The notes below the pieces were generated by a model that was not told where the DNA came from, searched no databases, and worked only from the letters and a program-made list of their open reading frames with translations. The translations under genes were made by a program, and so were the position numbers. A stretch of 64,000 nt of DNA from Podarcis tiliguerta (taxonomy: Eukaryota): the NCBI GenBank assembly GCA_965153285.1, contig OZ229119.1. One strand, given 5' to 3'. Shown piece by piece: positions 5,101-63,560 of this stretch (its first letter is position 1; the number at the start of each line of letters is the position of its first letter).

Positions 5101-7199
5101 AACTCAAACTGCACCACATTCTCATTGTTACTTGCCCTGTTAAATGACAGGCAGTGTGTCAATTTGAGGCAGAGCAAATGAACAGGACTCCACCTCTCCT
5201 GGAACAGTCCAAATGCATCGTCACATTTTGCCCTTTGCTTCTTCTTCTGAACAGCCCACACCATGGGCGCTGGCACTGCTACAGGAATGAATGAAAGACT
5301 TTATGGCTGAAAATACACCAATATACCATTAATCAAGTTTTGGAAATTCCATTTCCTCCCTCAGCTGGCCTGCTCCAATGATTGCTACTTACAATGGACA
5401 AGTTGTCTGTTCTGGACCTGGCAATATATGTTTAGAGGTGATGATCAATGTCTCTTGCATCATTCACAGAATCACAGATGGAGGAGACCCAGAGGAACAT
5501 CAGTCCAGTTATGTTCAACATTTTCAGATCTGGGACTGGGTCACACCTTTTACGTGGATCCCACGTTTAACATTTCTCCATCTCCATCCTTCCCCTTCTG
5601 TTTCCCCCCTCCCCAAACAAAAGAGTGCACCAACCCACCACTCAAAGCACAATGTTCTAGTTTGAGCTGCTTGCTTAAAGGCTACCAGCTGAACCATGTC
5701 TACACAACGCTAATTTGTAAATTGTGAGGATTTCAACTCCGCCAATCAAGTGATTTCCCAGGGCGACTCATTCCTGAAGCTTCCAGATAAACCCACTTTG
5801 CCCTAATTATAATGCACCACAAGGAGCCAAAGGCAAATTTATTAGCTATATGGTCAGCATTGTTTACAATAACAACAAATAAGGGGGGAACTATATTAAA
5901 ATTATGTAAGAGCAAAATGTTCCCAGCAAAGACTTGCACACAAAATGATTAATGTTTGTGTGTCACATTATAAATGCTGAACAATCAAATATGTAGAGAG
6001 TCAATAATTTACTGAAATATATTGATTTTGCTTCTTCTAACAGCTTGTAGCAGAAATCAGAGCTTAATATTACCTTTTCCTGCACGTCCTCTGTTTCTCT
6101 GCCTCGTCTTCTCTCATGCACTTGCACATGCACACACATGGTGAAAATTGCTACTGATCTTACCACCTTGTGGTTGGTGTGGCCAAAACAAATGCTTGTA
6201 TGTGTGATTGTGGTAAGAAAACTCTTCCTGACTACAAGAGCTCTCCCAGGGATTGCACCACAAAGAGAAAGCTAGAGCAAAGAAAGAGTCTCAGGCCAAA
6301 GACACTTGCTTGGTTAAATTAGTAGTTGCTGCTGCCTTAAAACAGCAGAAAGTTATAGAAAGGGAGAGAAACCTCAAGCTACACAAGGAAAGGGAAAAGA
6401 CCAAGCCTCCTTCTCAATGCAGTTCTTCCATTAGCATAGCAGACTTCCACTAGCACAGCCAAACTTTCCCCTCAGATCCTCTCCCCTGCACACCCTCAAA
6501 TTCTGCCCTAGAGGGTTGGAGACCCTCCAGAGGACCCTCCAGAGGGCAAGAAGAGCAAGTGGAAGTCCCATGGCACAAGATGAACTGCACGTGAGCCGTG
6601 TTGGATACGACCCATAGAAAGTAGGGTTCTGGAAAATGGGGTGGTGGGGGGGAACATCCCTAGTCTATTCCAAATGTTTTGGTTTGAGGCAAGACTAAGT
6701 ATGGGCCAGAACTTAAACCCCACCCCTTGTTGGCATTCGCTGCATTCAGTGAGCATCATCACTGTCCTCCAAGCACCCATGATAGTGTCAGAAGGGCTTC
6801 TGAGCTATTCTTTCCAGAGGATGAATTATCAGGCTCTCCATCTCAAAACACAGCTTCAGAAACAGCATTCAACGCAGTGTGAGATGGGGCTGCCAGAAAA
6901 AATAAGCTAGGGAAAACCCCAGGTGTAGGCGCCAAGCTTCCACCTCAGGTGTTCTCACCCAATGTACACAATAAAGAAACAATAAAATCTGTTTCTATTT
7001 TGACATGCTTTAAAACAAATGCATATAATTGTGTTTAATTGTTGCAACCCATACTGGGGCCTTAGGGCAAAGAGCAGGTAAATTGTGACAACAGTAACAG
7101 TAATATAATTATCACCACCATAAACAATGGAGGTTAGAAATAAGAATGAGAACTGTGGGCGGGGGGGGGGGGGGAAGCAGCTGAAGATACCACGAAAGC

Positions 7200-7534
7200 T
7201 ATCTTTGGAATTCTCACTTGTCCAAATTTTGCAATACAGTTTTCCAACAAAATCATGTGTACAAAATGCATATATAGGGGCAAGTGTGCCTAGAAATGCA
7301 TATATTAGTAAAAATAAAATATAGAAATACATTATATTAGGAAATTTCCTGTAAAAATGTTTAACAAAACTGCATACAAAAATATGTATATAAGCAGAAA
7401 TGCACAATAAAATGATGGAGAATACTTCTGATGACTTATTTTTAAGTTGCAAACTGATGCTGGAATGTGGAGAACTGAACTTGGGAAAATGCCAAACTAA
7501 GTTAAACTGAAATGGATGAATCCATCCACCCCTA
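7200..7534 (+). mobile_element. Non-autonomous DNA transposon (hAT-like), same family as 47541-48607
   Basis: AT-rich body (tgtgtacaaaatgcatat...ggaatgtggagaactgaac) shared with the copy at 47.5-48.6 kb; ends in ccccta. Confidence 0.6.
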
Positions 7535-10094
7535 CCGGCTATGGGTATTCTGTAGATGGGCCTTGGATGTGACCCAGCAAGGCTCTTCCTATGCTCTTAA
7601 TTGAATAGGTTTCCAGGGTTTTTCCTGGGCTTAACCCCAAAGACTTAAAGCCCTATGCAGTATTGGTCCTAGGTACTTACAGAAAAGCATCATCCCACTA
7701 TTCCTCCTGGTACCTTAAGATGGCCATGAGTGAGGACTAGGCTAGTTGTGCCAACAGAGATGTAAGAATCCAGTTCTGTCCTCTTTAAACTTTGAAAGCA
7801 GAAGGTGTGTGGCTTGAGACCACAGCACAGGGGAGGGAACTGTAATTTGTCTCCCCAGCACTATTTTCATGCTGAAAACTTTCTCCCCGCCTCCCCCAAG
7901 CTATTTGTCCTGACTAGATAAACATATGTGCATGCGTTCATTCATGCATCTCAGTAGTCACATCTAATTTGGTCTTAAGTCTCTGATTTTTGTTGTCTTC
8001 GTTTCTAGAGGTTCTGTGATTGATTAAAAGATCCAGGGACTTTCCCCCAGTGGTTCCCTCCTTTTGGAGATCCCCGACAGAAGCCCCGCTGGCAAGTTCA
8101 TGCCAGACTTTTAGAAGCATAGTTAAAAGCAAGAAGGGCTTGTTTTTGTTCTTTTTCCTGGTTCTGATTTCTGGGTGCTACTGCATTTTTCCTTGTGCAA
8201 GTGTGTGTGGTTCTTTAACAGTGAGCTGCTTCCAGAGCCCTCATGGCTAGTAACGTGTCTTATGAATGCTAGAAATAAATAAATCTGGCCCTGTTTGCAA
8301 AAGAACAAGGAAGGGATGGGGAGAACTACAGGCAGCCGTGTGACTAACTACCCAATGTATTATATGCGTGGGATATCAAGCAACAGGTGCTGGATCAGGA
8401 CTAACCCAAACAGAAGAGGATAGGGAAAACAAAGCGCCTGGAAAGCTACAAAGAAAGAGACCTGTTGGTGCTAAACAGATACTGTATGCACAGGTGGGCC
8501 GATGTTTACTGCGCATCTTCCCCCACCCCATTTCAAAACACTGAAGGATGGCTGGCAAACACAGCAAGACATGAAAAGATGTTCTCGCTTGGTTACATTT
8601 TAAAGGGCAGACACATGCTGATGCTATAGGATGAAACAGTTGTTTCATTTGCAGATTTAGGGAGCCCAATTGAAAATGCTGCCATAAAGATTTTTGACTG
8701 CTGGGTTTTGTGCTGATTCTGAGCTCTCTTTGCTTGTCATGGCAGTTTTGTATAGCTGGCAGTCTATACAAAAGCTCACTGAAAGCATCAGTTCTGGATG
8801 GCATTTCTTTGCTATCTGACAGCAGCTCCTGGGTAGATAATTGTGAAATATTTCAAGTGCTCACGATACAGGAGCAGTGCCAATTATTCTCCACTTTTAC
8901 TTTGGTGAAAAAACTATAAGATAGAGGTCCTCCCCATCTAGACCAAAAAAATAAAAAAAAATGGCAAAATATTTACTTAGTTTTATCCTGCTAGGCATCA
9001 TATCCCCCTCTACTGCTTTTGTGGTCCCCCCCCCCACTGCCCAATCTCTCCCCCCTCGGCTGCTTCTTTCCTGGATTAGTCATCTGGGTGTCCACACCCC
9101 AAACATATATCCCCAAATGGGATGATGCCGCACCTGCACTGCCAGCCACAGTCACGAAAGAAGGAACATTTGACTACACAGTGATGTCACTTGGGAGGAC
9201 AATGTACACACCGAAGGAAGCATTTTCACAAATAATGCTGGGAGGCAAACAGTGAAGAAGAAGTGTTTTGGCACTGACAAGTAATGTTTGCAAAGTCACT
9301 ACCATCATCATAATCTCCAATACTGACCACATCAATAGCCAAGTCAGAACACTCAAGAAATGAAAAGAAAATGCTATTTATTTAGGTTGAGATATTATTT
9401 AAAAGAGGGGAAAAAATTTACATTTTTGCTAGTCAATTATCAGTGGGCACACAGTTATCAGAGGAGGAATGACTGCTGGGAGGCGCTCAAAAAGAAGAAA
9501 TGCCACGGTGCATCTGCAGCAGGAGGAGCAGACGCCTTCATCAGGTGCAACAAAACATGTCAGTCTCTATGGCCACAGAAGATGCTGCAACCTTCCAGTG
9601 GTTTGACTTCACCCCCAAAGGCAGACTCCTCCATTGTCTCCCGAGACAGGCAGATGCCAAGGACAGCCAGCAGTGAATGAGGAAACACATGGTTTGATAC
9701 GGCTCCCTGGGTGACCTTGAGCTAATTATCTCACAAGGTTCTTGTGAGGGAAGGAAAAGGGATAACCTGAAGTACATGGCCTGATGGGAGATGGTGTACA
9801 GAGTCCCCTCTGCTACTATGCAGCAAGCATGCCAGAAAGAACATTAAAGAAACCTCCAGTGAGCACTCTCACTTTCACCTCACTTTTATCCTGAACACAT
9901 CAGTCCCATGCACAGGGTTTGTCTCTTTCCACTATATAACACAATATGTGCATCTGGCCGTGCTCAGCAATCTGTGGACTTGCCTTGTAGCTTGCCTGAG
10001 AGTGGCCATGGCAGCAACGGCCCCTTGTTTAATGAGTGTCCTTACCTACAGCACCACTAAGTTACCAGACACGTAAAGTACCACTTCCTCGGTT

Positions 10095-41404: not shown

Positions 41405-42432
41405 ATGGAGGGGGAGGGAACAGCTGCAGTCGCCTGCGGTTCCTGCGCAATGTTTGCCATCTTGTAAAGGTTGCAGGCAGCTTTACCTGCAGCAATTGCA
41501 TGTTGATTGCCCTCTTAGAAGACAAAGTCCAGCAACTGGAGGAACGTGTAGCTACGCTCCAAAGAATTAGAGAGCTGGAGCTCTTCTTGGAAGCAACAGA
41601 GCACACCGTCTCCACCAAGGAGGAGACAGGGGACTCCCCTGAGAAGGAGGCTAGTTCACCAACACAGGAGCCAGATATATGGAGAAATGTGACTCAAAGA
41701 AGTAGGAGGCCCAGGGTTCGCTCTGATTGTTTAGAAATACACAATCGCTTTGAGGTCCTCTCCCCTAGCATGGAAGACGAAGAGCAGATTCCATTTGAGG
41801 ATCTCTCCCTCATTACAGTCGATCAGGTATATGAAGACGAGCAGCAAAGTCAGAACTCAGGGAATGTGCAGGTGACCTTGGAACGGACAGCTCACGGAAG
41901 AACCCCGACCAAACCTAAGAGGAGGCGTGTAGTGGTGATAGGGGATTCCCTACTGAGGGGAACAGAAGCAGTGATCTGTGGGCCTGACAAGATGTCTCGG
42001 GAAGTGTGCTGTCTCCCCGGGGCTAAGATCCAAGATGTAACTGAACGACTGCCAGGAATCATAAAACCCACTGACAAATACCCCTTCCTCTTGGTTCATG
42101 TGGGAACCAATGACACTGCAAGCAATAGCCTCCAGAAGATCAAAAGAGACTACGAGGCTCTGGGCAGGAAATTGAAGCAATTAAATGCACAAATCGTCAT
42201 CTCATCTGTCCTCCCAGTTGAACGACGTGGCCCAGGGAGAGAGGGGAAAATAGTGGAAGTAAACAGCTGGCTTCGCAAATGGTGTAAACAGGAACGGTTT
42301 GGATTCTTAGATCACGGACTGCAGTTTTTTGAAGATAGACTTCTGGCAAGCGATGGGCTGCACCTCACAACGGTTGGGAGGAATGTTTTTGCCAAAAATC
42401 TCAGAAACCTTATCAGGAGTGCTTTAAACTGA
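41405..42432 (+). pseudogene. CR1 ORF1 (zinc finger, coiled coil, SGNH/GDSL esterase), one frameshift near 41465
   Basis: CGSC...CSNC zinc finger split across two frames; esterase blocks VVVIGDSLLRG, HVGTND and DGLH. Confidence 0.9.
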
Positions 42433-42437
42433 CTAAT

Positions 42438-44403
42438 GTGGGGGAGGGAGACAGTGCTCCTGAAGGTAGGAGTCTATCAATTGATGAAGATGATCATCCA
42501 AATGTCATAGACCAAATGGAGCAAACAGCACGCAGACCTAGTGGTGGGAGGAAAAAATCCTTAAATAAGAGACACGGGGGAATGATTAATGGACTTCAAT
42601 GTCTGTACACTAATGCGCAAAGCATGGGAAATAAACAAGATGAGCTTGAGCTCTTGGTACAGCAAACTAAATATGACATAATAGGCATCACTGAAACCTG
42701 GTGGGATAAGTCCCACGATTGAAATGTAATAATGGAGGGATACAATCTATTTCAGAGAAACAGACCAGACAAGAAAGGAGGAGGAGTGGCGTTATATGTC
42801 AGGGATGTGTATACCTGTGAAGAGATCCAAGATTTAGAACCTCAAAGCCAAAGTGAGAGCATTTGGGTCAAAATTACGGGAGAGAAGAATAACAGCGACC
42901 TCATTGTGGGAGTTTACTATAGATCCCCAAGCCAAATGGAGGACATAGATGATGCCTTCCTGGAACAGATGGCCAAGCATGCAAAAGGAAGGGAGATAGT
43001 AGTAATGGGGGACTTCAATTACCCGGATATTTGTTGGATGTCAAACTCAGCCAAGAGCATAAGGTCAAACAGATTCCTCACTGGCCTTGCAGACAACTTC
43101 ATTGACCAGAAAGTGGGAGAAGCAACAAGAGGAACAGCCATTTTAGATCTGGTCCTAACCAATGTTGATGACCTGGTTAGTGGGGTAGAAGTGGAAGGAT
43201 CACTAGGCGCGAGTGATCATGCTCTTCTGAAGTTTACTATACAGCGGAAAGGAGCAGCCAAGCATACTAGGACTCAATTTCTTGACTTTAAGAAAGCCGA
43301 CTTCATAAAACTTAGGGAAGTGCTGAGTGAGATCCCATGGACAGTAATACTAAAAGGAGAGGGAGTTCATGATGGCTGGGAGTTTGTTAAGAGGGAGATA
43401 GTAAAAGCACAACTTCAGGCAATACCAATGAGACGGAAACATGGAAGGTGCCTAAAGATGCCAGGGTGGCTATCTAAAGAACTTTTAACTGAGTTAAGAT
43501 TAAAAAAGGATGTGTACAAAAAATGGAAAAGGGGGGAAACCACCAAAGAGGAATTCAAACAAATAGCCAGCACGTGTAGACACAAAGTCAGAAAAGCTAA
43601 AGCACAGAATGAACTCAGGCTTGCTAGAGAGGTTAAAAGCAACAAAAAAGGCTTTTATGGGTATGTTCGTAGCAAAAGGAAGAACAAAGAAACAGTGGGG
43701 TCACTCAGAGGAGATGGTGAAATGCAAACAGGGGACACAGAAAGGGCTGAACTCCTCAATGCCTTCTTTGCCTCAGTCTTCTCCGATAAAGAAAACAATG
43801 CCCGACCTGAAGAATTTGGAGCAAATGATTCAGCAGAGGAAACACAGCCCAGAATAACTAAGGAGATAGTACAAGAATACTTGGCTAGTTTAGATGTATT
43901 CAAGTCTCTAGGGCCAGATGAACTGCATCCAAGAGTATGAAAAGAACTGGCAGATGTGATCTCAGAACCACTGGCAGTCATCTTTGAGAATTCCTGGAGA
44001 ACAGGCGAAGTCCCGGCAGACTGGAGGAGGGCAAATGGTGTCCCTATTTTCAAAAAGGGGGAAAGAGAGGACCCAAATAATTACCGCCCAGTCAGTCTGA
44101 CATCAATACCAGGGAAGATTCTGAAGCAGATCATTAAGCAAACAGTCTGTGAGCACCTAGAAAGGAATGCTGTGATCACCAATAGTCAGCATGGATTTCT
44201 GAAAAATAAGTCATGTCAGACTAACCTGATCTCGTTTTTTGACAGAATTACAAGCCTGGTAGATGAAGGGAACACAGTGGATGTAGCCTACCTTGATTTC
44301 AGCAAGGCATTTGACAAGGTGCCCCATGATATTCTTGTAAAGAAGCTGGTAAAATGCGGTCTTGACTATGCTACCACTCAGTGGATTTGTAACTGGCTGA
44401 CTG
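42438..44403 (+). pseudogene. CR1 ORF2 (APE endonuclease and N-terminal RT), two nonsense codons
   Basis: YTNAQS, GITETW, GDFNYPDI, SDH, NYRPVSLTS and YLDFSKAFD all in one frame, with TGA at 42720 and 43938. Confidence 0.93.
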
Positions 44404-45354
44404 ATTGATTGATGAAAAAGTGCTTTTCCCCCCTGAGATGCTAACTTTCTCTCTGCATGTCATTCCTTGAACAGCTTCCTGTGCCAAGATAAGGCTTGCT
44501 TTCATTGCTGTGCTCATTTTGACCAGTGTTGCGTGGAGCGAAATGCAACCAGTGGGCTGAAAAATGTCCCCCTCCTACCTCCTTGGGTTTCTGGTGTGGC
44601 CTTCTCAGATATTGGCACAACATGGGGTGTGTGTGATTTGGCTGCTGCCCTGTGCTCACCATTGTGAGGGCTGAGGGGGTGGTGGTGATGCCTCCCCAGA
44701 TGCTGCTATTGTCTGTAGGTTGACTGCAATGTCACAAAAACATTTGGCAGCTGAGCAGGTATAAATGTGGGCCAAGGCACAAGCCTCGGCAGTTGCCCTC
44801 CCCAGAGAGAAATGGGCAGCTCGGTGGCACTCAGCCCTGGTGGTCTCCTGCCCCGTGGCGGCAAGCTGGCAAGCGGAAGGAGGCAATCGCCCGGTGCTGG
44901 GATGCTGTGGAGCAAGGAGAAGGCAAGTACAAAATATACTTGCTGGTGAGATTGCTACCTGAAGGCGACTGATATTCCGCTCTGCAGCTGGTTGATGTCT
45001 GGCAATGGACCTGGCAAGGCTGCAGCTGGTGGGTGGTTGTCGGAAGAGTTTGTATTCAGGCTAGTGGATGCCGCAAGGCTACGCTGGCTGAGATGGATGC
45101 AAACTGGTTTGGAAGCCTTGTTTGTTAACAGGCAGCCAAACAGAGGAGTTGTCGGGGGGATGCTGTTGGATGGTGGCCATTCCCCTCACCTGTTTGCCTT
45201 TGCCTTACAGGGATGTCCAGAGCTGGTGAGGTTTTCCCCAAGTCCCGCCTTCAAAATCATGAAGAGAACTGCAGGACGTCCATATTAACATCGGAGAAAT
45301 GAACGTGAAATACTGGCAGTGAGCAATGGACAAGGCTGTGACGCTTTGAACAGG

Positions 45355-45730
45355 AATGGCTTCCCCTCAGGGATTCTGGGAACTGTAGGTAGTTAAGGGA
45401 ATGGAGAGTTGTTAGGGTGGTTAAGGATTAGGATTTGGGTTAAGGTTAGGGTTAGGGTTCCCTTCTTGTCAGGGAACTCTGGGAGTTGTAGCTCTAGTTA
45501 AGGGTTAAGGGTTAGGGTTAGGTTTAGAGTCAGGGGTAGTGTTAGGATTAGGGGTAGGGTTTCCTTCTTGGCAGGGAACTCTGGGAGTTGTAGCTCTGGG
45601 AGGGGAGTAGGGGGTCTCCTAACAACTCTCAGCACCCTTTTCAAACTATAGCTCCCAGATTCTTTGGGGGAAGGAGCCATGAGTGTTTAAAGCGGGTTGA
45701 TAGTGCTTTAAATGGTGTGGATGTGGCCCT
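45355..45730. mobile_element. Squamate MITE (ctgggaactgtag / ctatagctcccag type) carrying degenerate (TTAGGG)n arrays
   Basis: Inverted atggcttcccc...ggggaaggagccat termini; internal ggttagggttaggg tracts. Confidence 0.65.
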
Positions 45731-47186
45731 GGCCTCGCTCACCCCACTGCCTCTTATTATTGAGGAATCGAAAGGATTTCTCCATTCAGATCTCTCGGAA
45801 ACAGGAAGAAGAAAGACTTTGTATCTCATGCCATTTTGAAATGTCTTAACGTGAAATGCCAATAAAGGTATTTGTATTGTATTGTATTGTATTGTGATTA
45901 ACATGGGAAGTGGAATGGTAAAATGTTAATGAGGTGGACATGATACTTCTGTAAACTGGCATGTTTCTTGTGGGCGTGGAAGGAGGGACTTGTGGCCGGA
46001 CAAGCGACTTTATAAGATGTGTTTTTCCTGATGATGTGCCTGATCTTGGGTTACCCCCCTTGCAAGTGTGTATAATAAAAAGGTTTCCTAATTCACCCAT
46101 TTTGTCCAGATCACTTTATTTAAAAGGATCCAGTGAACTTAACTCAAAGGAACCAGTTTATTTATGTCTCACAAAGGGGGGGGGGACACCACAGCTGCAC
46201 ACCCACCTCCCTTCCCTGCCTGCTATCTCCCCTTCCTCCACCCCACTGGCAGTGCATCCTCCCCCCACCCCCTCCCCAAAAAGCTCGCTGTGACCCAAGA
46301 CGTTTTGCACTCACCTGAACCCTTGCAGGGAAAGGGGCAGGGCACAATGGGAAGGGGCGTGGCAACTGGGCTGCTTAAACCACGCCCCCTTTCCAACGGA
46401 AGCGGCATGGAGGGGTCAGTATCCAGCACCCCCTTCTCTGCCTTTCTTGAACTCTTTGACTTTAACCCTTAAGACTATGCAAGTGAAACAGCCACCATCC
46501 CTCCCTGAGTTTTTCAGCAAGGTCTTCCCTTTTTAGGGGGTGGGGTGAAATGTACTTTTGTTTAAACCGTGAGGAGGGAGAAAGGGAAGAATAAAGACGC
46601 AGAGTCAGCTTCCAGGACTAATGAAAAGATTGTTTAGCCTTCGACAGGCAATTCTTTGGAAATAAATCAGAGGAAGGGTTACACGCCTCAGCCTGAGTAG
46701 ACATCCATCCCAATGCACTTTGGTATCATTAGCACAAATGGAATACGCCTCTGGTATTTCTTTTCATTTAAGGTGCCCTGAGAGGGTAGGCATATTATTC
46801 AGCAGAGCTTGTATTTCCCTTTCCGACATGATGTGGGGAGAAATACCAATCTCATGACTCCATGGGTGGTTTATTCAGGGGCAGGTGGGGGGACGTTTAT
46901 ACTCTGCACTCACATTCTGCACAACTCATGAGACACTACAGAAATAAACTGCCTGCTTGGCATGAAAGAAGCTAAGCCACATGAGATGAGGCCTGATACT
47001 GGCTTCACCCCAAGTCTCTCTCCCAATCTCACAAGGCCAGGAGATGCCAAGCTATGCCCTTGTGATATTTGAGGCCATGGCACCCAGGAAGCTTCCTTCT
47101 GTGCCTGCTGTATTCTCCTTCTCTGCAGGCATTGCCACAGGTCAGGGAGAGCATTTTCTTCCCCTCATCACAACTGACAAAATGGC

Positions 47187-47538
47187 ACCACAGCACTTGG
47201 GCTTGCCGATCAGAAGGTTGGCGGTTTGAATCCGCACAACGGGGTGAGCTCCTGTTGCTCTGTCCCAGCTCCTGCCAACCTAGCGGTTCAAAAGCACGCC
47301 AGTGCAAGTAGATAAATAGGTACCGCTGCGATGGCAAGGTAAACGCCGTTTCTGTGCGCTCTGGTTTCTGTCATGGTGTTCCGTTGCGCCAGAAGCGGCT
47401 TAGTCATGCTGGCCACATGACTCGGAAAGCTGTCTGTGGACAAACACTGGCTCCCTTGGCCTGAAAGCGAGATGAGTGCCACACCCCATAGTCACCTTCA
47501 ACTGGACTTAACTGTCCAGGGGTCCTTCACCTTTTTTT
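47187..47538 (+). mobile_element. Sauria SINE
   Basis: cttgccgatcagaaggttggcggtttgaatcc...gcaagtagataaataggtacc...caggggtccttcacc. Confidence 0.92.
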
Positions 47539-47780
47539 ACACGGGGTGGGGAGGAGTGGGGGGGGGATTCAATTCAGTTCTCATTTAAATACAAACCTAC
47601 CTAATTCACACTGAAACAGTACATGGACTGAAACATAGCCATCCTTTGAAATTCACACCTCTCCAAATTTTTCATTGCAGTTCTCCAGCCAAGTAATGTG
47701 TACAAAAATGCATATGCTAGGATAAAGTGTCTACCACAATGCAAATAATAACATAAACAAATGTGTATATTGAAGTGTAT

Positions 47781-47964
47781 GGGGTGTTAGGGGAGGAGTA
47801 GTACTTCTGGTAGCGGACACGTCATGCTTCTTTTGAGGAAGCTTGTCCACTTTTGGTCTCCATCCTGCAGTCAGCTCTCACCTTTGGCTCCTAGAAGCTG
47901 TCAGCATGCGACAGCGGCCACACCCTGGGAACGGCTTCCACTGGCCGGCTAAACCAGGTGAGGG
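47781..47964 (+). ncRNA. HDV-like self-cleaving ribozyme (predicted)
   Basis: Hand-folded nested double pseudoknot: P1 47781-87/47920-26 with G1-U wobble, P2 47875-83/47956-64, P3 47886-88/47917-19, L3 UCCUAGAA, P1.1 CC/GG, P4 CGGC/GCCG, J4/2 CUAA with C47949. Confidence 0.75.
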
Positions 47965-48460
47965 GAGCCGATGGGTTTTAAACCCTCAGTGAGTTAGGGA
48001 CTCACTGCATGTGAAGACAAGCTCTGGCAGATTGGGTGGACGAAACCAAGAATGGGTCCAACAGTCAAGAAAGGTGTTGTAGAGGGAAGTGAGGGGCCTG
48101 TCAACCTGGGAACATAGCCGATCTAGGAGAAGGAAAGCTAACCTCTGCTGCCTTGCAGGATATCTTCAGGAAAAGAAAAGGTTAAGAAGTAAACGCCACA
48201 AAACCAGAGTGGAGTCTCCAAGATGGCTTCTTGTATGCCTCCTTCTGGCAGCCAAGCTGGTGCCAAATGTCTTATTCGGTTTTCCTTTCGACCCCATCAG
48301 TGAGGCCAAGAGAGTCTTGTCATCTGGGCAGCCCAGGACCTCCATGCACAAAGCCCAGCCTTGCACCCAGGGAGGTTACTTTGGCACTGCTAACACAGCA
48401 GATTGGCTTCATTCCCAGAGGCACACTCCACTGTCTCTCAAGACAGACGGATGCTAACTA
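47781..48460 (+). mobile_element. Non-autonomous RTE-derived retroelement (5' UTR fused to 3' end, no ORF)
   Basis: RTE 5' UTR motif gatctaggagaaggaaa; RTE-type 3' end cactccactgtctctcaagacagacggatgctaac; interrupts an older DNA transposon. Confidence 0.75.
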
Positions 48461-49935
48461 GAACATTAGGGGAAATTTGTAGTAAAATGCTGATTAATTT
48501 TCATGGGAATTTTTAGCACCCCCCTGCCCCCCTAATTGTTGTGGAAATGTGGAGGACTGAACCACATGCTAGAAACTGAATAAACCAAACAAATCTGTTT
48601 ATTCCTACATTGAAATAAGAGCCAGTTCTGTCATAATAATTATCCTGCATTTATATCACTTCTGTGTAAGAAATGGTGTGTTCATTCACATGTATGAAGA
48701 ATGCAGTGTGGCGTATCTATTTATCTTATGGGGCAGTGAACAAAGTTATATCCCACATAGGAGAATTGTCATGCATGAAAGGAGTCTTCAGTACATAACA
48801 GTCTCTGTGCGATTAGGCCTGCTTTCTGAGGCTGGAATTCTCCACTGAGTCTACAAAATCCTTTCCCAAGGGCACATTGTCTACAGTCTTATTGAGCACC
48901 TTGTTGATGAAAAATTACTAGAGCCCTTACTGCCTGGATGGCTATTCATCTATACAAAACTGGAATACATTCATACTACAAAAGTGTATTGGTTTTAAAT
49001 CAGTTAAACTCTCACAGCTTCTTCCGAAAAATATTGGGAACTGTAGTTTGGTGGAAATCCTCTTGGTGAGAAAATGATGACCTTTGTTAGTGCTGAAAAG
49101 GGAATAGGTTTTGAACTGGTTTAAGTCTATAATGCATCTATGCCATTAATAAAAACTGGCAGATTGGGGAGCCCTGACCTGTACACTTCATAGGTGAAGA
49201 AAATTTGGGGAAAGAGGTGGACTAGAAATGCAACAAACAAACAAACTTGCAATGTGGGGGCAAATGAGCACTCTCTCACGTGCACTCTGAGGTGGCGTGA
49301 GCGCTTGAGCAGATTGTCCTCATTTTTTGTTTTGTTCCTTCTAAGCTTCTTAGTGTGAAGGCAGTTATCCCATGGCTTCGTATCATGTAAGACAGATGGC
49401 CAGACCAGGAAATCAAAACCTCCCTGTTTGCTTTATGGGGCTCCTTGCCTTATTTATGTAGTTATAAGTGCCAGTTGTACTTTGCCTTCAGAGAAAAATA
49501 ATAATGAAACATTTAAAAAACTGCTCCTGGGATTGGGGAAGGAGGTGATATCACAGGTACCAGCCAATCCACACCACTGACAGCTAGTTTCTGTTGTAGA
49601 CTTGCAGACCCAGTTATTTCAGGGACTGACCCAGGTGATGAAAAAGCACATTTGAACTGACCACAGCAAGGCCTATCAATCTGTATCTGCTCCATTTCCT
49701 TAGTTTTACACAGAATTTAAGCGGTGTGCTTTATTTCAGGTTTGCTAAACCTGTGGCCATTCAAACCACTTCAAAATGATAGGCAAACATACTGCTTTCC
49801 CCCACCCCATTCCCCATGAAGTAGGAATCCCAGCCTGCATTTTTAAGATAAACAGCTCTCAGTCTGACACATAAAGACAGTTGGGTTTTGGTGCAGTCTG
49901 CAGCAATCAGTGACACACTATCCAACTGAGAAGTC

Positions 49936-49936
<1 letters not shown>

Positions 49937-49989
<53 letters not shown>

Positions 49990-49993
49990 TATT
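49937..49993. repeat. (TTA)n microsatellite
   Basis: Directly visible tandem repeat. Confidence 0.95.
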
Positions 49994-52900
49994 AGAAGAA
50001 GTTGAAAGCAGAATTAGGTGAAAGCAGAATTCCGAACAGCAAAACTAGAAAGGAATTAAAAAGAGTTAGCTATATCCATGACTTCACCAGGTAGTTGTAA
50101 GGGGAAATTAAGAGGAAGGTCTGTACGCACAGATTCTGCGTGATGAGGTCTCCTGCTTTTCCCAGGGTTCCTGGTTGTGCACAAAAGTAGTACACCTGTG
50201 CAAGCCTCTGGGGCTGATGATGTAAGGGTCGGGGCCGGGGCTGGCCTGTTAGTTGCCTGAACAGACTAAGGAGGACCAGGGTTTGGAAAGCAAGCTCAAT
50301 ATTTTGAAGGAATAAGACGAGCAAAGTCAGAGATATGGAAGAGGAGAGGATGGTATAGCAGCAGGAGAATAAGTGAAAACTCAAAACAAGAAGCACCATG
50401 TTGTGAGAGGAGAGAGGATGGAAAAGAAGGAGGAAGAGTAGCCGAGAGAAGATTATCTTCCTTATACCTTTAGTGTTCCAAGGCACTGAAGAAGAATCCA
50501 GTTGCTATGACTTCTGGCCTGTTCTTCAACTGGTCACCTTGCCCAACATCCCACCCCCTTCTCATAGTCAGAATTCTGACATACAACACACAGGAAGAGG
50601 ATGGCCCAGGTGACCAGGGAGGGATAGGGTGGGACGTGCAAGGGTTGCACCTTCTCTTTGGGATTAGAACATTTCTAGGCAAGGACTTTGCAAGCTTATT
50701 GGGAGGAGACAGCTAACTCTTTCTAACTCTTTGCCCAGTCACGTTGCGTGGAGTGACATTTGAGATGGTTTTGAAGGCTCCAGCTTGGACAAAATTGCTA
50801 AGGAAACCTTTTTTAAAAGTGTTTTGATTGGGCAGATGGAATTTTAAAAAGTGGGGCAGGGAGGAGAAAGAGAGCCTAAGGCAAAATGTGACATAAATTT
50901 GGAAATTCATAATTAGGGAAAATATCTGAAGAATGCTAAGGGAAGCTAAAAGAATATCTGTGGGAGTAGGAAAAACTATACGTTACACACCATGGTTTAA
51001 CGATCAGTTTGCCACCATTTTTACTGGAAGAGCACTCTGAAACCTAGACATTTAGCAAGTGACATTTCCTGCACCACTTATTTCCAGGAAAGACTTCACA
51101 CCAGCATAATCTGTGTGTGTGTCAGGATGCTGTTCACAACTCAGGAGCAGCTCCAGTAAAAGACTCGCCCGCTCCTGCTATGCTCCACCACAGAGTCATG
51201 TGGCCCCTGCGCATTTGAACAGAATATGCTGGGATACAAATGACTGCACAAAGCATTGCTTTTCAAACTAGGAATGTTTATGCTCGCATTGAAATGCCTT
51301 TTCTGTTTCTTTCACAACTGCTAAGACTATCAGTGATCACTGAGTTTTCCTTTCATATTTTTAAAATTATTACAGTCCAAAGCAGAGGGAGATGGGTGGG
51401 GCAAAAACAAATACCATACTGGTGAGCAATCAGAATTAAAACTGTGGTAAAACTGCTCTCAGTAAAGCTATTTCCCACGACACAACTGCATTCAGTATAA
51501 CCCACAATTGGACAGGCTGCCAATCACTTGCTGTGTCTGCTCAAAGCAGGACCACTTTGAAACCCTAAAGATCACTTAGAGCTTTCTCTGGTCAGGCTGA
51601 AAAGGAATAATCTACAAACACCTGAGAAATGAAATTTTATTTCAAGAACAGACTTCTCGCAAGATATAACTGGGGTGGGGAAGGAGTAGGGGGAGTGACG
51701 ATAGGAAAACTGGAAATAAACAAAAGTTGCACTGAACGTGTCTGAAAACGAGGCTGAAAACCCAATTGTGTGAGAGAATTATTTCTGAATAGCCCTATTC
51801 ATGAAAAAATAATTCTTTCATCACATGAATTATTAGTTGGCCTGGTCGTGTGCCAAACCTGGTTAAACCAAGTCAAGTTTACCCAAATTTCCTCCTGCAA
51901 TTTCTATTCCTTCATCCCCCTTTCGATATCAAGGAGTTGTTACATGCTCCTATGTTCCAACAATGCCCTTGCCCAATTACTGAATGTGCCCCATGTGTAA
52001 AACTGGCTGTGACTCTCTGATAAGGGTTCGCTCAGTGACAGACGCAAGTTAAATGGTTAGGCCCTGTGTGGTAAGTAAGTATTTGGGAAAGGGAAGATGC
52101 CACTTGTTTTGCAAGTTGTAAACCCAAAGACCCAATTCAATACACTATCAACTAGACTTTCCCAAGCCTGCCATGTGGAGGAGGATGGCTGAAAACAAAT
52201 AATTCAGAAGCAGCTTCTGTGCCACGGTGAGCAAAGCTGTCCACGTAGAAATTCCCTCTTCAGACCATACAACTAGTTGCTCTTTTTCTCCTTCCAAACA
52301 TTCCTTTCCTACAGCCAACAGCTTCACACACAAATCATGGAAGGTGGCCAGGAGGCCATCTTCACGGTGTGTGCAAGGCAGACATACGCAGCTTTGGGAC
52401 GAGTTAGGGGTTAAATAATGATTGGGGGAGTCCAGAACCTTTAATAGCTGCATAGAGCAATGCATTTTGGCAGGTGAATCTTGTTATGCAGGGATGAAAA
52501 TCCTCTTCTCCAGAATTATTAAAGGTATATGCTAAAAGCCCTCTAAGGGCAGGCACACTTTATCGACTTAAAACTCAGGGAGGTAGTTCCCTCCTGTACT
52601 TCAAGTTGCGTTTTACATTTCTGTATGCACCATATGATTACATTATTTGTTTTCCCTGCATTACCTGATTTGTTGCTGTGCATCTGCAACCACCCCAACC
52701 ACTAGTCTATGAAGCCACTATCTATGCATGCACAAAAGGTTTCTAAAATGTAACCTCAACTTACATTTTACAATCAGATGTAACTTGGTTTAAGAGAAAG
52801 TGCATCAACCAGCAGTATTTCTCTAGAAACTGCAAGATACGTAACAAACTGTCATGAATTCTCTGCTTCAAACGGAAGTTGTGGAAGTTTACCCAAGCCA

Positions 52901-63223: not shown

Positions 63224-63560
63224 AAGGATAAAAGGTAAAGGGGCCCCTGACAGTTAAGTCCAGTCGCGAACAACTCTGGGGTTGTAGCACTCATCTTGCT
63301 TTAAAGGCTGGAGAGCCGATGTTTGTCCGCTTCCACAGACAGTTTTTCCGGGTCATGTGGCCAGCACCGTTTACCTTCCCGCCGGAGCGTTACCTATTTA
63401 TCTACTTGTACTTTGATGTGCTTTTGAACTGCTAGGTTGGCAGGAGCAGGGACCGAACAACAGGAACTCACCCTGGGGGGGGGGGGGGATTTGAACAGCC
63501 AACCTTTCGATTGGCAAGCCCAAGCAGCTCAGTGGTTTAGACCACAGGCACCAATGTCCC
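63224..63560 (-). mobile_element. Sauria SINE
   Basis: Reverse-strand Sauria SINE body (tacctatttatctacttg); 13-bp TSD tttcttaggttta. Confidence 0.92.

What the first reader, a model, noticed from the sequence alone, without database searches (positions are those of the whole stretch)
47781..47964. Complete HDV-like ribozyme fold at the apparent 5' end of a lizard retroelement
Seen, in canonical order: P1 GGGGUGU (47781-87) pairs ACACCCU (47920-26) with the G1-U wobble. An 87-nt J1/2 holds its own stems (ggaca/tgtcc, gcttc/gaagc). P2 CUCUCACCU pairs AGGUGAGGG (9 bp) and P3 GGC pairs GCC. L3 is UCCUAGAA, with U, CC and G at the HDV U20, C21-C22 and G25 positions. GG directly after P1' forms P1.1, P4 is CGGC/GCCG, and J4/2 is G-C-U-A-A with putative catalytic C47949. 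G1 lies within ~8 nt of where the host transposon sequence stops. Established: HDV-like ribozymes process the 5' ends of R2 and invertebrate RTE retrotransposons. Inference: a multi-copy self-cleaving RNA family in lizards that frees the element from read-through host transcripts and could cut pre-mRNAs when inserted sense in introns. The top of P2 is imperfect in this copy, so it may be weakened.
Basis: partly seen in the sequence, partly recalled or inferred. Interest (0 to 1): 0.9.

Follow-up and report, generated by a model that had tools for sequence, protein, structure and literature searches.

The report
Candidate HDV-like ribozyme heading lizard retroposon
The first 184 bases of a short non-coding retroposon can be drawn as a hepatitis-delta-type self-cleaving RNA, with one unusual extra hairpin. 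The match is better than chance within this window. Whether it really cuts itself could not be tested, because no other copies could be fetched.

Summary
The description left out two things. L3 is 28 nt, not 8: UCCUAGAA, then a 6-bp hairpin, then G. Three more bases (ACC) lie between GCUAA and P2'.

A canonical descriptor does not match. A descriptor relaxed after the fact matches only this site in the window. Its chance expectation is 0.012 per window, or 0.0005 with P2 as long as observed. That gives about 8, or 0.3, over the 673 windows scanned so far. Rfam finds nothing, and the folding energy is no better than shuffles.

The fold starts where a host repeat stops (about 47780). The element ends at 48457 in a 62-nt tail also found at 9596-9660, so it is an ORF-less retroposon. 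An 8-base duplication (TTAGGGGA) could instead be a target-site duplication, which would place P1 in host DNA.

No homologues could be fetched, so covariation and the pile-up of 5' ends are untested. First readers flagged similar folds on other pieces of this genome, and those notes are unchecked. My odds: real HDV-like ribozyme family about 0.45, chance about 0.3.

The parts
47770..47780 (.). End of the host repeat. Possible left copy of a degenerate target-site duplication (TTGAAGTGTAT).
   Evidence: Alignment to the other host copy at 7174-7513. Empty-site reconstruction is best with the left join at 47772-47781.
47781..47787 (+). P1 5' strand. G47781 is the predicted first base after the cut (cleavage between 47780 and 47781).
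47788..47874 (+). J1/2, 87 nt. It folds as a long imperfect hairpin closed by 47791-98/47858-66, like the P1.2 helix of the large drz-Agam-2 ribozymes.
   Evidence: PMC4908430
47875..47883 (+). P2 5' strand. It is followed by UU (47884-85), which faces CC 47954-55 as two mismatches.
47886..47888 (+). P3 5' strand (GGC)
47889..47896 (+). L3 core UCCUAGAA. U, CC and G fall at the positions of HDV U20, C21-C22 and G25.
   Evidence: The HDV numbering is from my own knowledge.
47897..47915 (+). Non-canonical hairpin inside L3: 6 bp with a 7-nt loop. It is followed by G47916.
47917..47928 (+). P3' (GCC), P1' (ACACCCU) and the P1.1 GG
47932..47947 (+). P4 hairpin: 4-5 bp with a 6-nt loop
47948..47955 (+). 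J4/2 GCUAAACC, with the putative catalytic C47949
47956..47964 (+). P2 3' strand
47965..48395 (+). Body of the element. It has no credible ORF, no Pfam match and no protein relatives.
48396..48457 (+). 3' tail module with a stem-loop, ending in GATGCTAA. It is shared with 9596-9660.
   Evidence: nhmmer E 1.2e-4. Smith-Waterman score 30 against shuffles 12.7 +/- 1.3. Alignment.
48459..48473 (.). Resumption of the host repeat. It holds TAGAACAT (a possible right target-site duplication copy) and TTAGGGGA 48466-73, which repeats 47787-94 (the rival target-site duplication).
9596..9660 (+). Second copy of the 3' tail module only. Its upstream sequence is unrelated.

Best explanation
Bases 47781-47964 are the 5' head of an ORF-less, LINE-dependent retroposon (47781-48457). 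[quoted passage not shown] Inferred mechanism:
1. The element has no promoter of its own and is transcribed as part of a longer host transcript.
2. The RNA folds into the nested double pseudoknot. J1/2 is closed by its own helix, which brings P1 and P2 together.
3. C47949 acts as the general acid/base, and the chain is cut between U47780 and G47781.
4. The RNA now starts exactly at the element's first base. The partner LINE's reverse transcriptase recognises the 3' stem-loop tail and copies it.

What is shown: the helices, their order, the conserved L3 and J4/2 letters, the position at the host/element boundary, and the shared 3' tail. What is inferred: folding into the pseudoknot, catalysis, tolerance of the extra L3 hairpin, and the partner LINE being of RTE type. 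This particular copy may be decayed even if the family is active.
For: - All five helices lie in the HDV order with G1-U, U at -1, L3 U-CC-G, and C followed by UAA.
- It is the only hit to the relaxed descriptor in 128 kb. There were 0 hits in 16.6 Mb of random sequence. The expectation is 4.6e-4 per window at the observed P2 length.
- G1 falls at the point where the host repeat stops. Empty-site reconstructions joining at 47772-47781 score 25-26.5, against 21 when 47781-94 is counted as host.
- The 3' end is defined by a tail shared with 9596-9660, and there is no ORF. So this is a non-autonomous retroposon, the context in which HDV-like ribozymes are known.
- The pseudoknotted model is about as stable as the nested minimum-energy fold: -52.7 plus -13.2 for P2, against -66 kcal/mol.
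- Active R2 ribozymes have J1/2 loops of 23 to over 700 nt and mismatches at the base of P2. One active R2 ribozyme has atypical L3 spacing (PMC3774820).
- A helix closing J1/2 activates the large ribozyme Agam-2-1 (PMC4908430).
Against: - An L3 of 28 nt with an inserted hairpin was not found in anything I could read. The strict descriptor fails.
- No Rfam family matches, even at E up to 10 on 206 nt.
- The folding energy is no better than shuffles (z = -0.2). The minimum-energy fold pairs L3 with P1'/P1.1 instead.
- The descriptor was fitted after seeing the candidate. Scaled to 673 windows, it predicts 0.3 to 8 chance hits.
- TTAGGGGA occurs at both 47787-94 and 48466-73. If it is a target-site duplication, P1 lies outside the element.
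- No second copy of the 5' part and no homologue were available, so there is no covariation evidence and no evidence on 5' ends.
Confidence: 0.45

Rival explanations
1. This is chance complementarity. The element's 5' region happens to contain P2, P3, P4 and a CUAA string. The 7-base partner for P1' lies in flanking or target DNA, with TTAGGGGA as a true 8-bp target-site duplication and the element starting at about 47795. There is no ribozyme.
For: - A perfect 8-mer is duplicated at 47787-94 and 48466-73.
- A 7-mer complementary to P1' within 200 nt upstream is expected a few percent of the time. P1+GG alone occurs about 119 times per 128 kb of random sequence.
- The relaxed descriptor predicts 0.3 to 8 chance hits over the windows scanned.
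- There is no Rfam hit, and the folding z-score is -0.2.
- G-rich strings like the first 18 bases recur nearby, at 47544-60 and 39409-27.
Against: - Eight bases (CTAGAACA) separate the end of the shared tail (48457) from the 8-mer, so it does not abut the element.
- Counting 47781-94 as host lowers the fit to the other host copy: 21 against 25-26.5.
- That stretch is G-rich, whereas the host repeat is 37% G+C.
- The full fold at this quality has a per-window expectation of 4.6e-4.
Confidence: 0.3
2. The 5' head is a real, conserved structure of the retroposon or its parent LINE, but it does not self-cleave. It might serve reverse-transcriptase or ribosome binding or RNA stability, or be a descendant of a ribozyme that lost activity when the hairpin was inserted into L3. 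Alternatively, the family is active but this copy is dead.
For: - The L3 insertion and the lengthened J4/2 lie in the catalytic core, where spacing matters.
- An R2 ribozyme that lacks the L3 G folds correctly but is inactive (PMC3774820).
- HDV-like folds are also credited with protein binding and IRES-like roles (PMC6765202).
- The element's CpG observed/expected ratio is 0.28, equal to the window mean, so this copy is not evidently young.
Against: The catalytic C, the L3 U/CC/G and the G1-U pair are all intact in this copy. That is unexpected after long neutral decay of a dead motif.
Confidence: 0.15

Closest known systems
[quoted passage not shown] Sources: Ruminski et al. 2011, cited from other papers and not held in the library; PMC3774820; PMC4908430; PMC6765202.
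   Same: - Nested double pseudoknot with G1 at the element's first base.
- Long J1/2 with its own closing helix.
- 3-bp P3, L3 with U-CC-G, and C-U-A-A in J4/2.
- Mismatches at the base of P2.
- A promoter-less retroposon that needs release from a co-transcript.
   Different: - A 19-nt hairpin inside L3 (28 nt against 7-8).
- An extra G before the catalytic C.
- The host is a lizard, where I found no report of such ribozymes in the held library.
- Activity is untested.
HDV antigenomic/genomic ribozymes and the mammalian CPEB3 ribozyme
   Same: - Helix order and a 7-bp P1 with G-U at the cleavage site.
- The L3 start UCCU.G and the J4/2 sequence GCUAA resemble the viral ribozymes. That comparison is from my own memory of those sequences and was not tested.
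   Different: - Those are compact (about 68-85 nt) with a short J1/2 and an 8-nt L3.
- Rfam models of these families do not match this sequence at any E up to 10.
Bipartite non-autonomous RTE elements (for example MAR4, RTESINE2, WALLSI3, RTE-N families; PMC5786205)
   Same: - Short and ORF-less.
- The 5' end is retained and the 3' tail is LINE-type with a stem-loop.
- No tRNA-like head: ARAGORN finds no tRNA just upstream at 47100-47600, and Rfam finds no family on the element.
- That paper itself links retention of the 5' end to a possible ribozyme.
   Different: - Membership of the RTE clade is not shown here. The window holds no RTE coding sequence.
- The tail does not resemble the BovB-type tail of the neighbouring SINE.

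Membership tests
HDV-like self-cleaving ribozyme | Nested double pseudoknot: P1, P2, P3, P1.1 and P4 in the order P1-P2-P3-L3-P3'-P1'-P1.1-P4-J4/2-P2' | tested here: met
   All helices are found at the stated coordinates.
HDV-like self-cleaving ribozyme | P1 of about 7 bp that starts with G1, usually as a G-U wobble; P1' immediately follows P3' | tested here: met
   The P1 strands are 47781-87 and 47920-26, G47781 pairs with U47926, and J3/1 is 0 nt.
HDV-like self-cleaving ribozyme | 3-bp P3 closing a short L3 (7-8 nt) that carries the P1.1 cytosines | tested here: not met
   P3 is 3 bp and L3 starts UCCUAGAA. But L3 is 28 nt because of the hairpin at 47897-47915. The strict descriptor gives 0 hits.
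HDV-like self-cleaving ribozyme | Catalytic C as the first base of J4/2, followed by purines, then P2' | tested here: inconclusive
   C47949-U-A-A is present. A G precedes it, and ACC follows before P2'. ACC can be read as an extra A plus two U.C mismatches at the base of P2 (PMC3774820).
HDV-like self-cleaving ribozyme | Match to a curated covariance model (Rfam HDV, CPEB3 and drz families) | tested here: not met
   No hit at E up to 10 on 7 kb or on 206 nt, and none at gathering score on the whole window. As far as I know, these models represent pseudoknots and large insertions poorly.
HDV-like self-cleaving ribozyme | Covariation that supports the helices across homologues | not testable with these tools
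   No homologue was obtained.
HDV-like self-cleaving ribozyme | Mg-dependent self-cleavage 5' of G1, abolished by changing the catalytic C to U | not testable with these tools
   This is a bench assay.
Non-autonomous LINE-dependent retroposon (claimed RTE type) | A conserved 3' tail shared among copies, with sequence that varies upstream of it and differs after it | tested here: met
   48396-48457 matches 9596-9660 and the similarity stops at GATGCYAA.
Non-autonomous LINE-dependent retroposon (claimed RTE type) | Insertion into a recognisable target, with a target-site duplication | tested here: inconclusive
   The element splits a host repeat. Two candidate duplications compete: a degenerate 8-11 nt one that abuts both ends, and a perfect 8-mer offset from both ends.
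Non-autonomous LINE-dependent retroposon (claimed RTE type) | 5' and 3' ends homologous to an RTE-clade LINE | not testable with these tools
   There is no RTE or BovB coding or reference sequence in the window or in any reachable collection.

The most novel reading that the evidence does not exclude
Squamate RTE-lineage retroposons, and possibly BovB itself as unchecked scan notes suggest, are headed by an active HDV-like ribozyme whose L3 loop carries an inserted helix. Such a structural subclass would escape the descriptor and covariance-model searches used so far. It would give lizards thousands of self-cleaving RNAs, including sense copies in introns that can cut host pre-mRNAs.
Probability: 0.35. 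Interest if true: 0.75.

Novelty: new variant of a known kind. Interest (0 to 1): 0.5.

Why it matters
- HDV-like ribozymes are established at the 5' ends of R2, RTE, L1Tc and related elements, mostly in invertebrates and protists. In the papers I read, the examples named in amniotes are the CPEB3 ribozyme and a predicted R2 ribozyme in zebra finch.
- A high-copy ribozyme family in lizard retroposons would extend the 'cut yourself out of a host transcript' strategy to amniote LINE-dependent elements.
- It would explain why bipartite non-autonomous elements keep the exact LINE 5' end.
- It would show that the catalytic L3 loop tolerates a helix insertion. That would widen the motif used in ribozyme searches.
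- It would also predict cleavage of host pre-mRNAs at sense intronic copies.

Tried and rejected
- Second copies in the window: blastn and nhmmer found none for the 5' part. Only the 3' tail recurs, at 9596-9660.
- Protein route to other copies: the 122-aa ORF in the element has no Pfam match and no relatives.
- RTE or BovB coding fragments in the window: none. The only LINE is a CR1/L2-like element at about 41500-46500.
- Exact-pattern scans of the metagenome, viral and prokaryote genome collections were all blank.
No RNA 5' ends or paralogue variation were obtained.
- Scan-notes look-ups by sequence and by relatives were blank.
- Paper searches for these sequence strings, and for HDV-like ribozymes in BovB or reptile RTE, found nothing relevant. 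Ruminski et al. 2011 is not held.
- Alternative P3 (GGC/GCU, which keeps L3 at 8 nt and puts the hairpin in J3/1): considered and judged less stable than GGC/GCC plus the 6-bp hairpin.
- A very relaxed descriptor to look for a fold upstream of the second tail copy gave 25 sites on one strand, so its hit at 8871 means nothing.
- The GGGGT..GGGGAGGAGT repeat at 47544-60 and 47781-99 as a target-site duplication around the left host segment: rejected. The G-run belongs to the host repeat's own start.

Full report
**What is in the sequence.**
- P1 GGGGUGU (47781-87) pairs with ACACCCU (47920-26): six Watson-Crick pairs plus the G1-U wobble, with U at -1.
- P2 CUCUCACCU (47875-83) pairs with AGGUGAGGG (47956-64): 9 bp, one of them G-U.
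- P3 GGC (47886-88) pairs with GCC (47917-19), and P3' directly abuts P1'.
- GG 47927-28 can pair with CC 47890-91 (P1.1).
- P4 is CGGC(U)/(G)GCCG at 47932-36/47943-47.
- C47949 sits in GCUAA.
J1/2 as a whole is also closed by an 8-bp helix, 47791-98/47858-66.

The description left out two things.
- L3 is not 8 nt. After UCCUAGAA come a perfect 6-bp hairpin (47897-47915) and one G before P3', so L3 is 28 nt. A sister note, s1-827774, acknowledges this.
- J4/2 is GCUAAACC. There is a G before the C, and three bases (ACC) before P2'. On the other strand, UU sits between P2 and P3.

The UU and the CC of ACC can be read as two U.C mismatches at the base of P2. Eickbush and Eickbush report that about a third of R2 ribozymes have mismatches there (PMC3774820). 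That leaves the L3 hairpin as the one serious departure from the canonical fold.

**Is it more than chance?**
I wrote a descriptor search.
- A strict canonical version (L3 7-8 nt, no extra J4/2 bases) finds nothing in the window.
- A relaxed version, built after seeing the candidate, allows L3 up to 30 nt, up to 3 extra J4/2 bases and J2/3 up to 2 nt. It finds exactly one site in both strands of the window, and that site is this one.
- In 16.6 Mb of first-order Markov sequence with the window's dinucleotide make-up it found none.
- Factorising the search gives 3.8 partial matches (P1+GG+P3+UCC) per 128 kb. The conditional probability of the remaining features is 0.0032 for P2 of 6 bp or more, and 0.00012 for 9 bp or more.
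- The expectation is therefore 0.012, or 4.6e-4, per window.

That is clearly unusual for one window. Multiplied by the 673 windows of this genome read so far, it comes to about 8, or 0.3. The descriptor was also fitted after the fact. The fold alone therefore does not exclude chance.

Other tests gave no support.
- No Rfam family matches at E up to 10, on 7 kb or on 206 nt, and none matches at gathering score in the whole window. As far as I know, these models represent pseudoknots and large insertions poorly.
- The minimum free energy of the 184 nt (-66 kcal/mol) is no better than shuffles (z = -0.2).
- The nested minimum-energy fold keeps P2 but pairs L3 with P1'/P1.1.
- The pseudoknotted model is about as stable: -52.7 for the nested part plus -13.2 for the P2 duplex. 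It is feasible but not favoured.

**What the surrounding element is.**
- Downstream there is no LINE ORF. The longest frame (48089-48457, 122 aa) has no Pfam match and no protein relatives.
- nhmmer found that the last 62 nt (48396-48457) recur at 9596-9660. Smith-Waterman scores 30, against 12.7 +/- 1.3 for shuffles.
- The similarity stops sharply at GATGCYAA, and the sequences upstream of the tail are unrelated.
- The tail contains a stem-loop in which a C-to-U difference keeps the pair as a G-U wobble.

This is the signature of a LINE-type 3' tail module used by non-autonomous retroposons. It fixes the 3' end at 48457 and the orientation as +.

The element splits an AT-rich host repeat. The other copy of that repeat lies at 7174-7513 and is 79% identical. 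I could not verify that the partner LINE is of the RTE clade. The window's only LINE is a CR1/L2-like element at about 41500-46500 with esterase ORF1, APE and RT domains. The tail also differs from the BovB-type tail of the SINE at about 47190-47541.

**Where the 5' end lies.**
This is the crux, because the ribozyme reading requires P1 to belong to the element.

I rebuilt the empty site for every pair of joins and aligned each reconstruction to the other host copy.
- The best joins are left 47772-47781 and right 48456-48465, scoring 25-26.5.
- This puts the left boundary at or within a few bases of G47781.
- It suggests a degenerate target-site duplication: TTGAAGTGTAT at 47770-80 and TAGAACAT at 48459-66. 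Both align to the host's TAGAAATACAT and both abut the element.

A rival exists. The 8-mer TTAGGGGA occurs at 47787-94 and again at 48466-73. If that is the true target-site duplication, the element starts at about 47795 and the P1 5' strand is target DNA. Three points count against this.
- That reconstruction scores only 21.
- Eight bases separate the tail's end from the 8-mer.
- 47781-98 is G-rich like the element (53% G+C), unlike the host repeat (37%).

I put about two to one on G1 being the first base of the element.

**Comparators.**
None could be obtained.
- The window holds no second copy of the 5' part.
- Scans of the metagenome, viral and prokaryote collections were blank.

Covariation, the pile-up of 5' ends and RNA ends are therefore untested.

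The scan's notebook lists at least ten first-reader notes on other pieces of this genome. They describe the same kind of fold at the 5' ends of RTE-type elements (168-183 letters, with the 'extra hairpin') and of BovB (128-131 letters). If those notes are right, P1 lies at a fixed distance inside the element in independent copies, and the target-site-duplication rival would be settled against. They are unchecked notes by the same kind of reader. I treat them as the first thing to test, not as support.

**Comparison with what is known.**
- HDV-like ribozymes release R2, RTE, L1Tc, Baggins and related elements from co-transcripts (PMC6765202, PMC3774820, PMC5786205).
- In R2 ribozymes P1 and P1' are separated by 23 to over 700 nt.
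- A helix that closes J1/2 ('P1.2') accelerates the large ribozyme Agam-2-1 by nearly three orders of magnitude (PMC4908430). The 87-nt J1/2 here has just such a closing helix.
- One active R2 ribozyme (jewel wasp) has atypical spacing in L3. I found no report of a helix inserted in L3.
- I found no paper in the held library on HDV-like ribozymes in BovB or reptile RTE elements. Ruminski et al. 2011 is not held.
- Kojima (PMC5786205) already proposed that a 5' ribozyme explains why bipartite non-autonomous RTEs keep the exact LINE 5' end.

**Verdict.**
The most likely reading, at about 0.45, is a genuine HDV-like ribozyme head of a non-autonomous retroposon, of a variant type with a helix in L3. 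This copy's activity is uncertain. Chance complementarity, with P1 supplied by target DNA, is about 0.3. A conserved but non-cleaving or decayed structure is about 0.15. The question can be settled quickly with the genome's other copies and a standard cleavage assay.

Noticed in passing
window 41500-46533 (+): Decayed CR1/L2-like LINE. ORF1 has a GDSL-esterase domain (41500-42432), followed by an APE endonuclease (42732-43940) and the start of a reverse transcriptase (43956-44408). The rest is broken into short frames.
   Followed up: partly
window about 47190-47541 (+) and 63230-63264 (-): SINE that I recognise from memory as Sauria-type, ending in a BovB-like tail (…ACTGTCCAGGGGTCCTTCACC T-run). 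A second fragment of that tail lies at 63230-63264. ARAGORN calls no tRNA in the SINE head.
   Followed up: partly
window 9596-9660 (+): Second copy of the 62-nt 3' tail module, attached to unrelated upstream sequence. One C-to-U difference in the tail's stem-loop keeps the pair as a G-U wobble. The 5' limit of this second element was not found.
   Followed up: partly
window 7174-7513 and 47613-47780 + 48459-48616: Two copies (79% identical) of an AT-rich repeat that starts with a G-run. Our copy is the one split by the retroposon. It also has a C-rich insertion at about 48516-48537 that the other copy lacks.
   Followed up: partly
window 47544-47560 and 47781-47799: GGGGT..GGGGAGGAGT occurs twice, 237 nt apart, differing by a 4-nt indel. 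The first copy sits in the G-rich start of the host repeat. It is probably a low-complexity coincidence, but this was not explained.
   Followed up: partly
window 49936-49994: (TAT)n microsatellite: 19.7 copies, 96% matches.
   Followed up: no
window 45573-45665 (+): Long hairpin inside the LINE, with weak sub-threshold similarity to the miRNA precursor models mir-1805 and mir-674 (24-26 bits, against gathering scores of 64-93). Most likely a repeat-derived hairpin.
   Followed up: no
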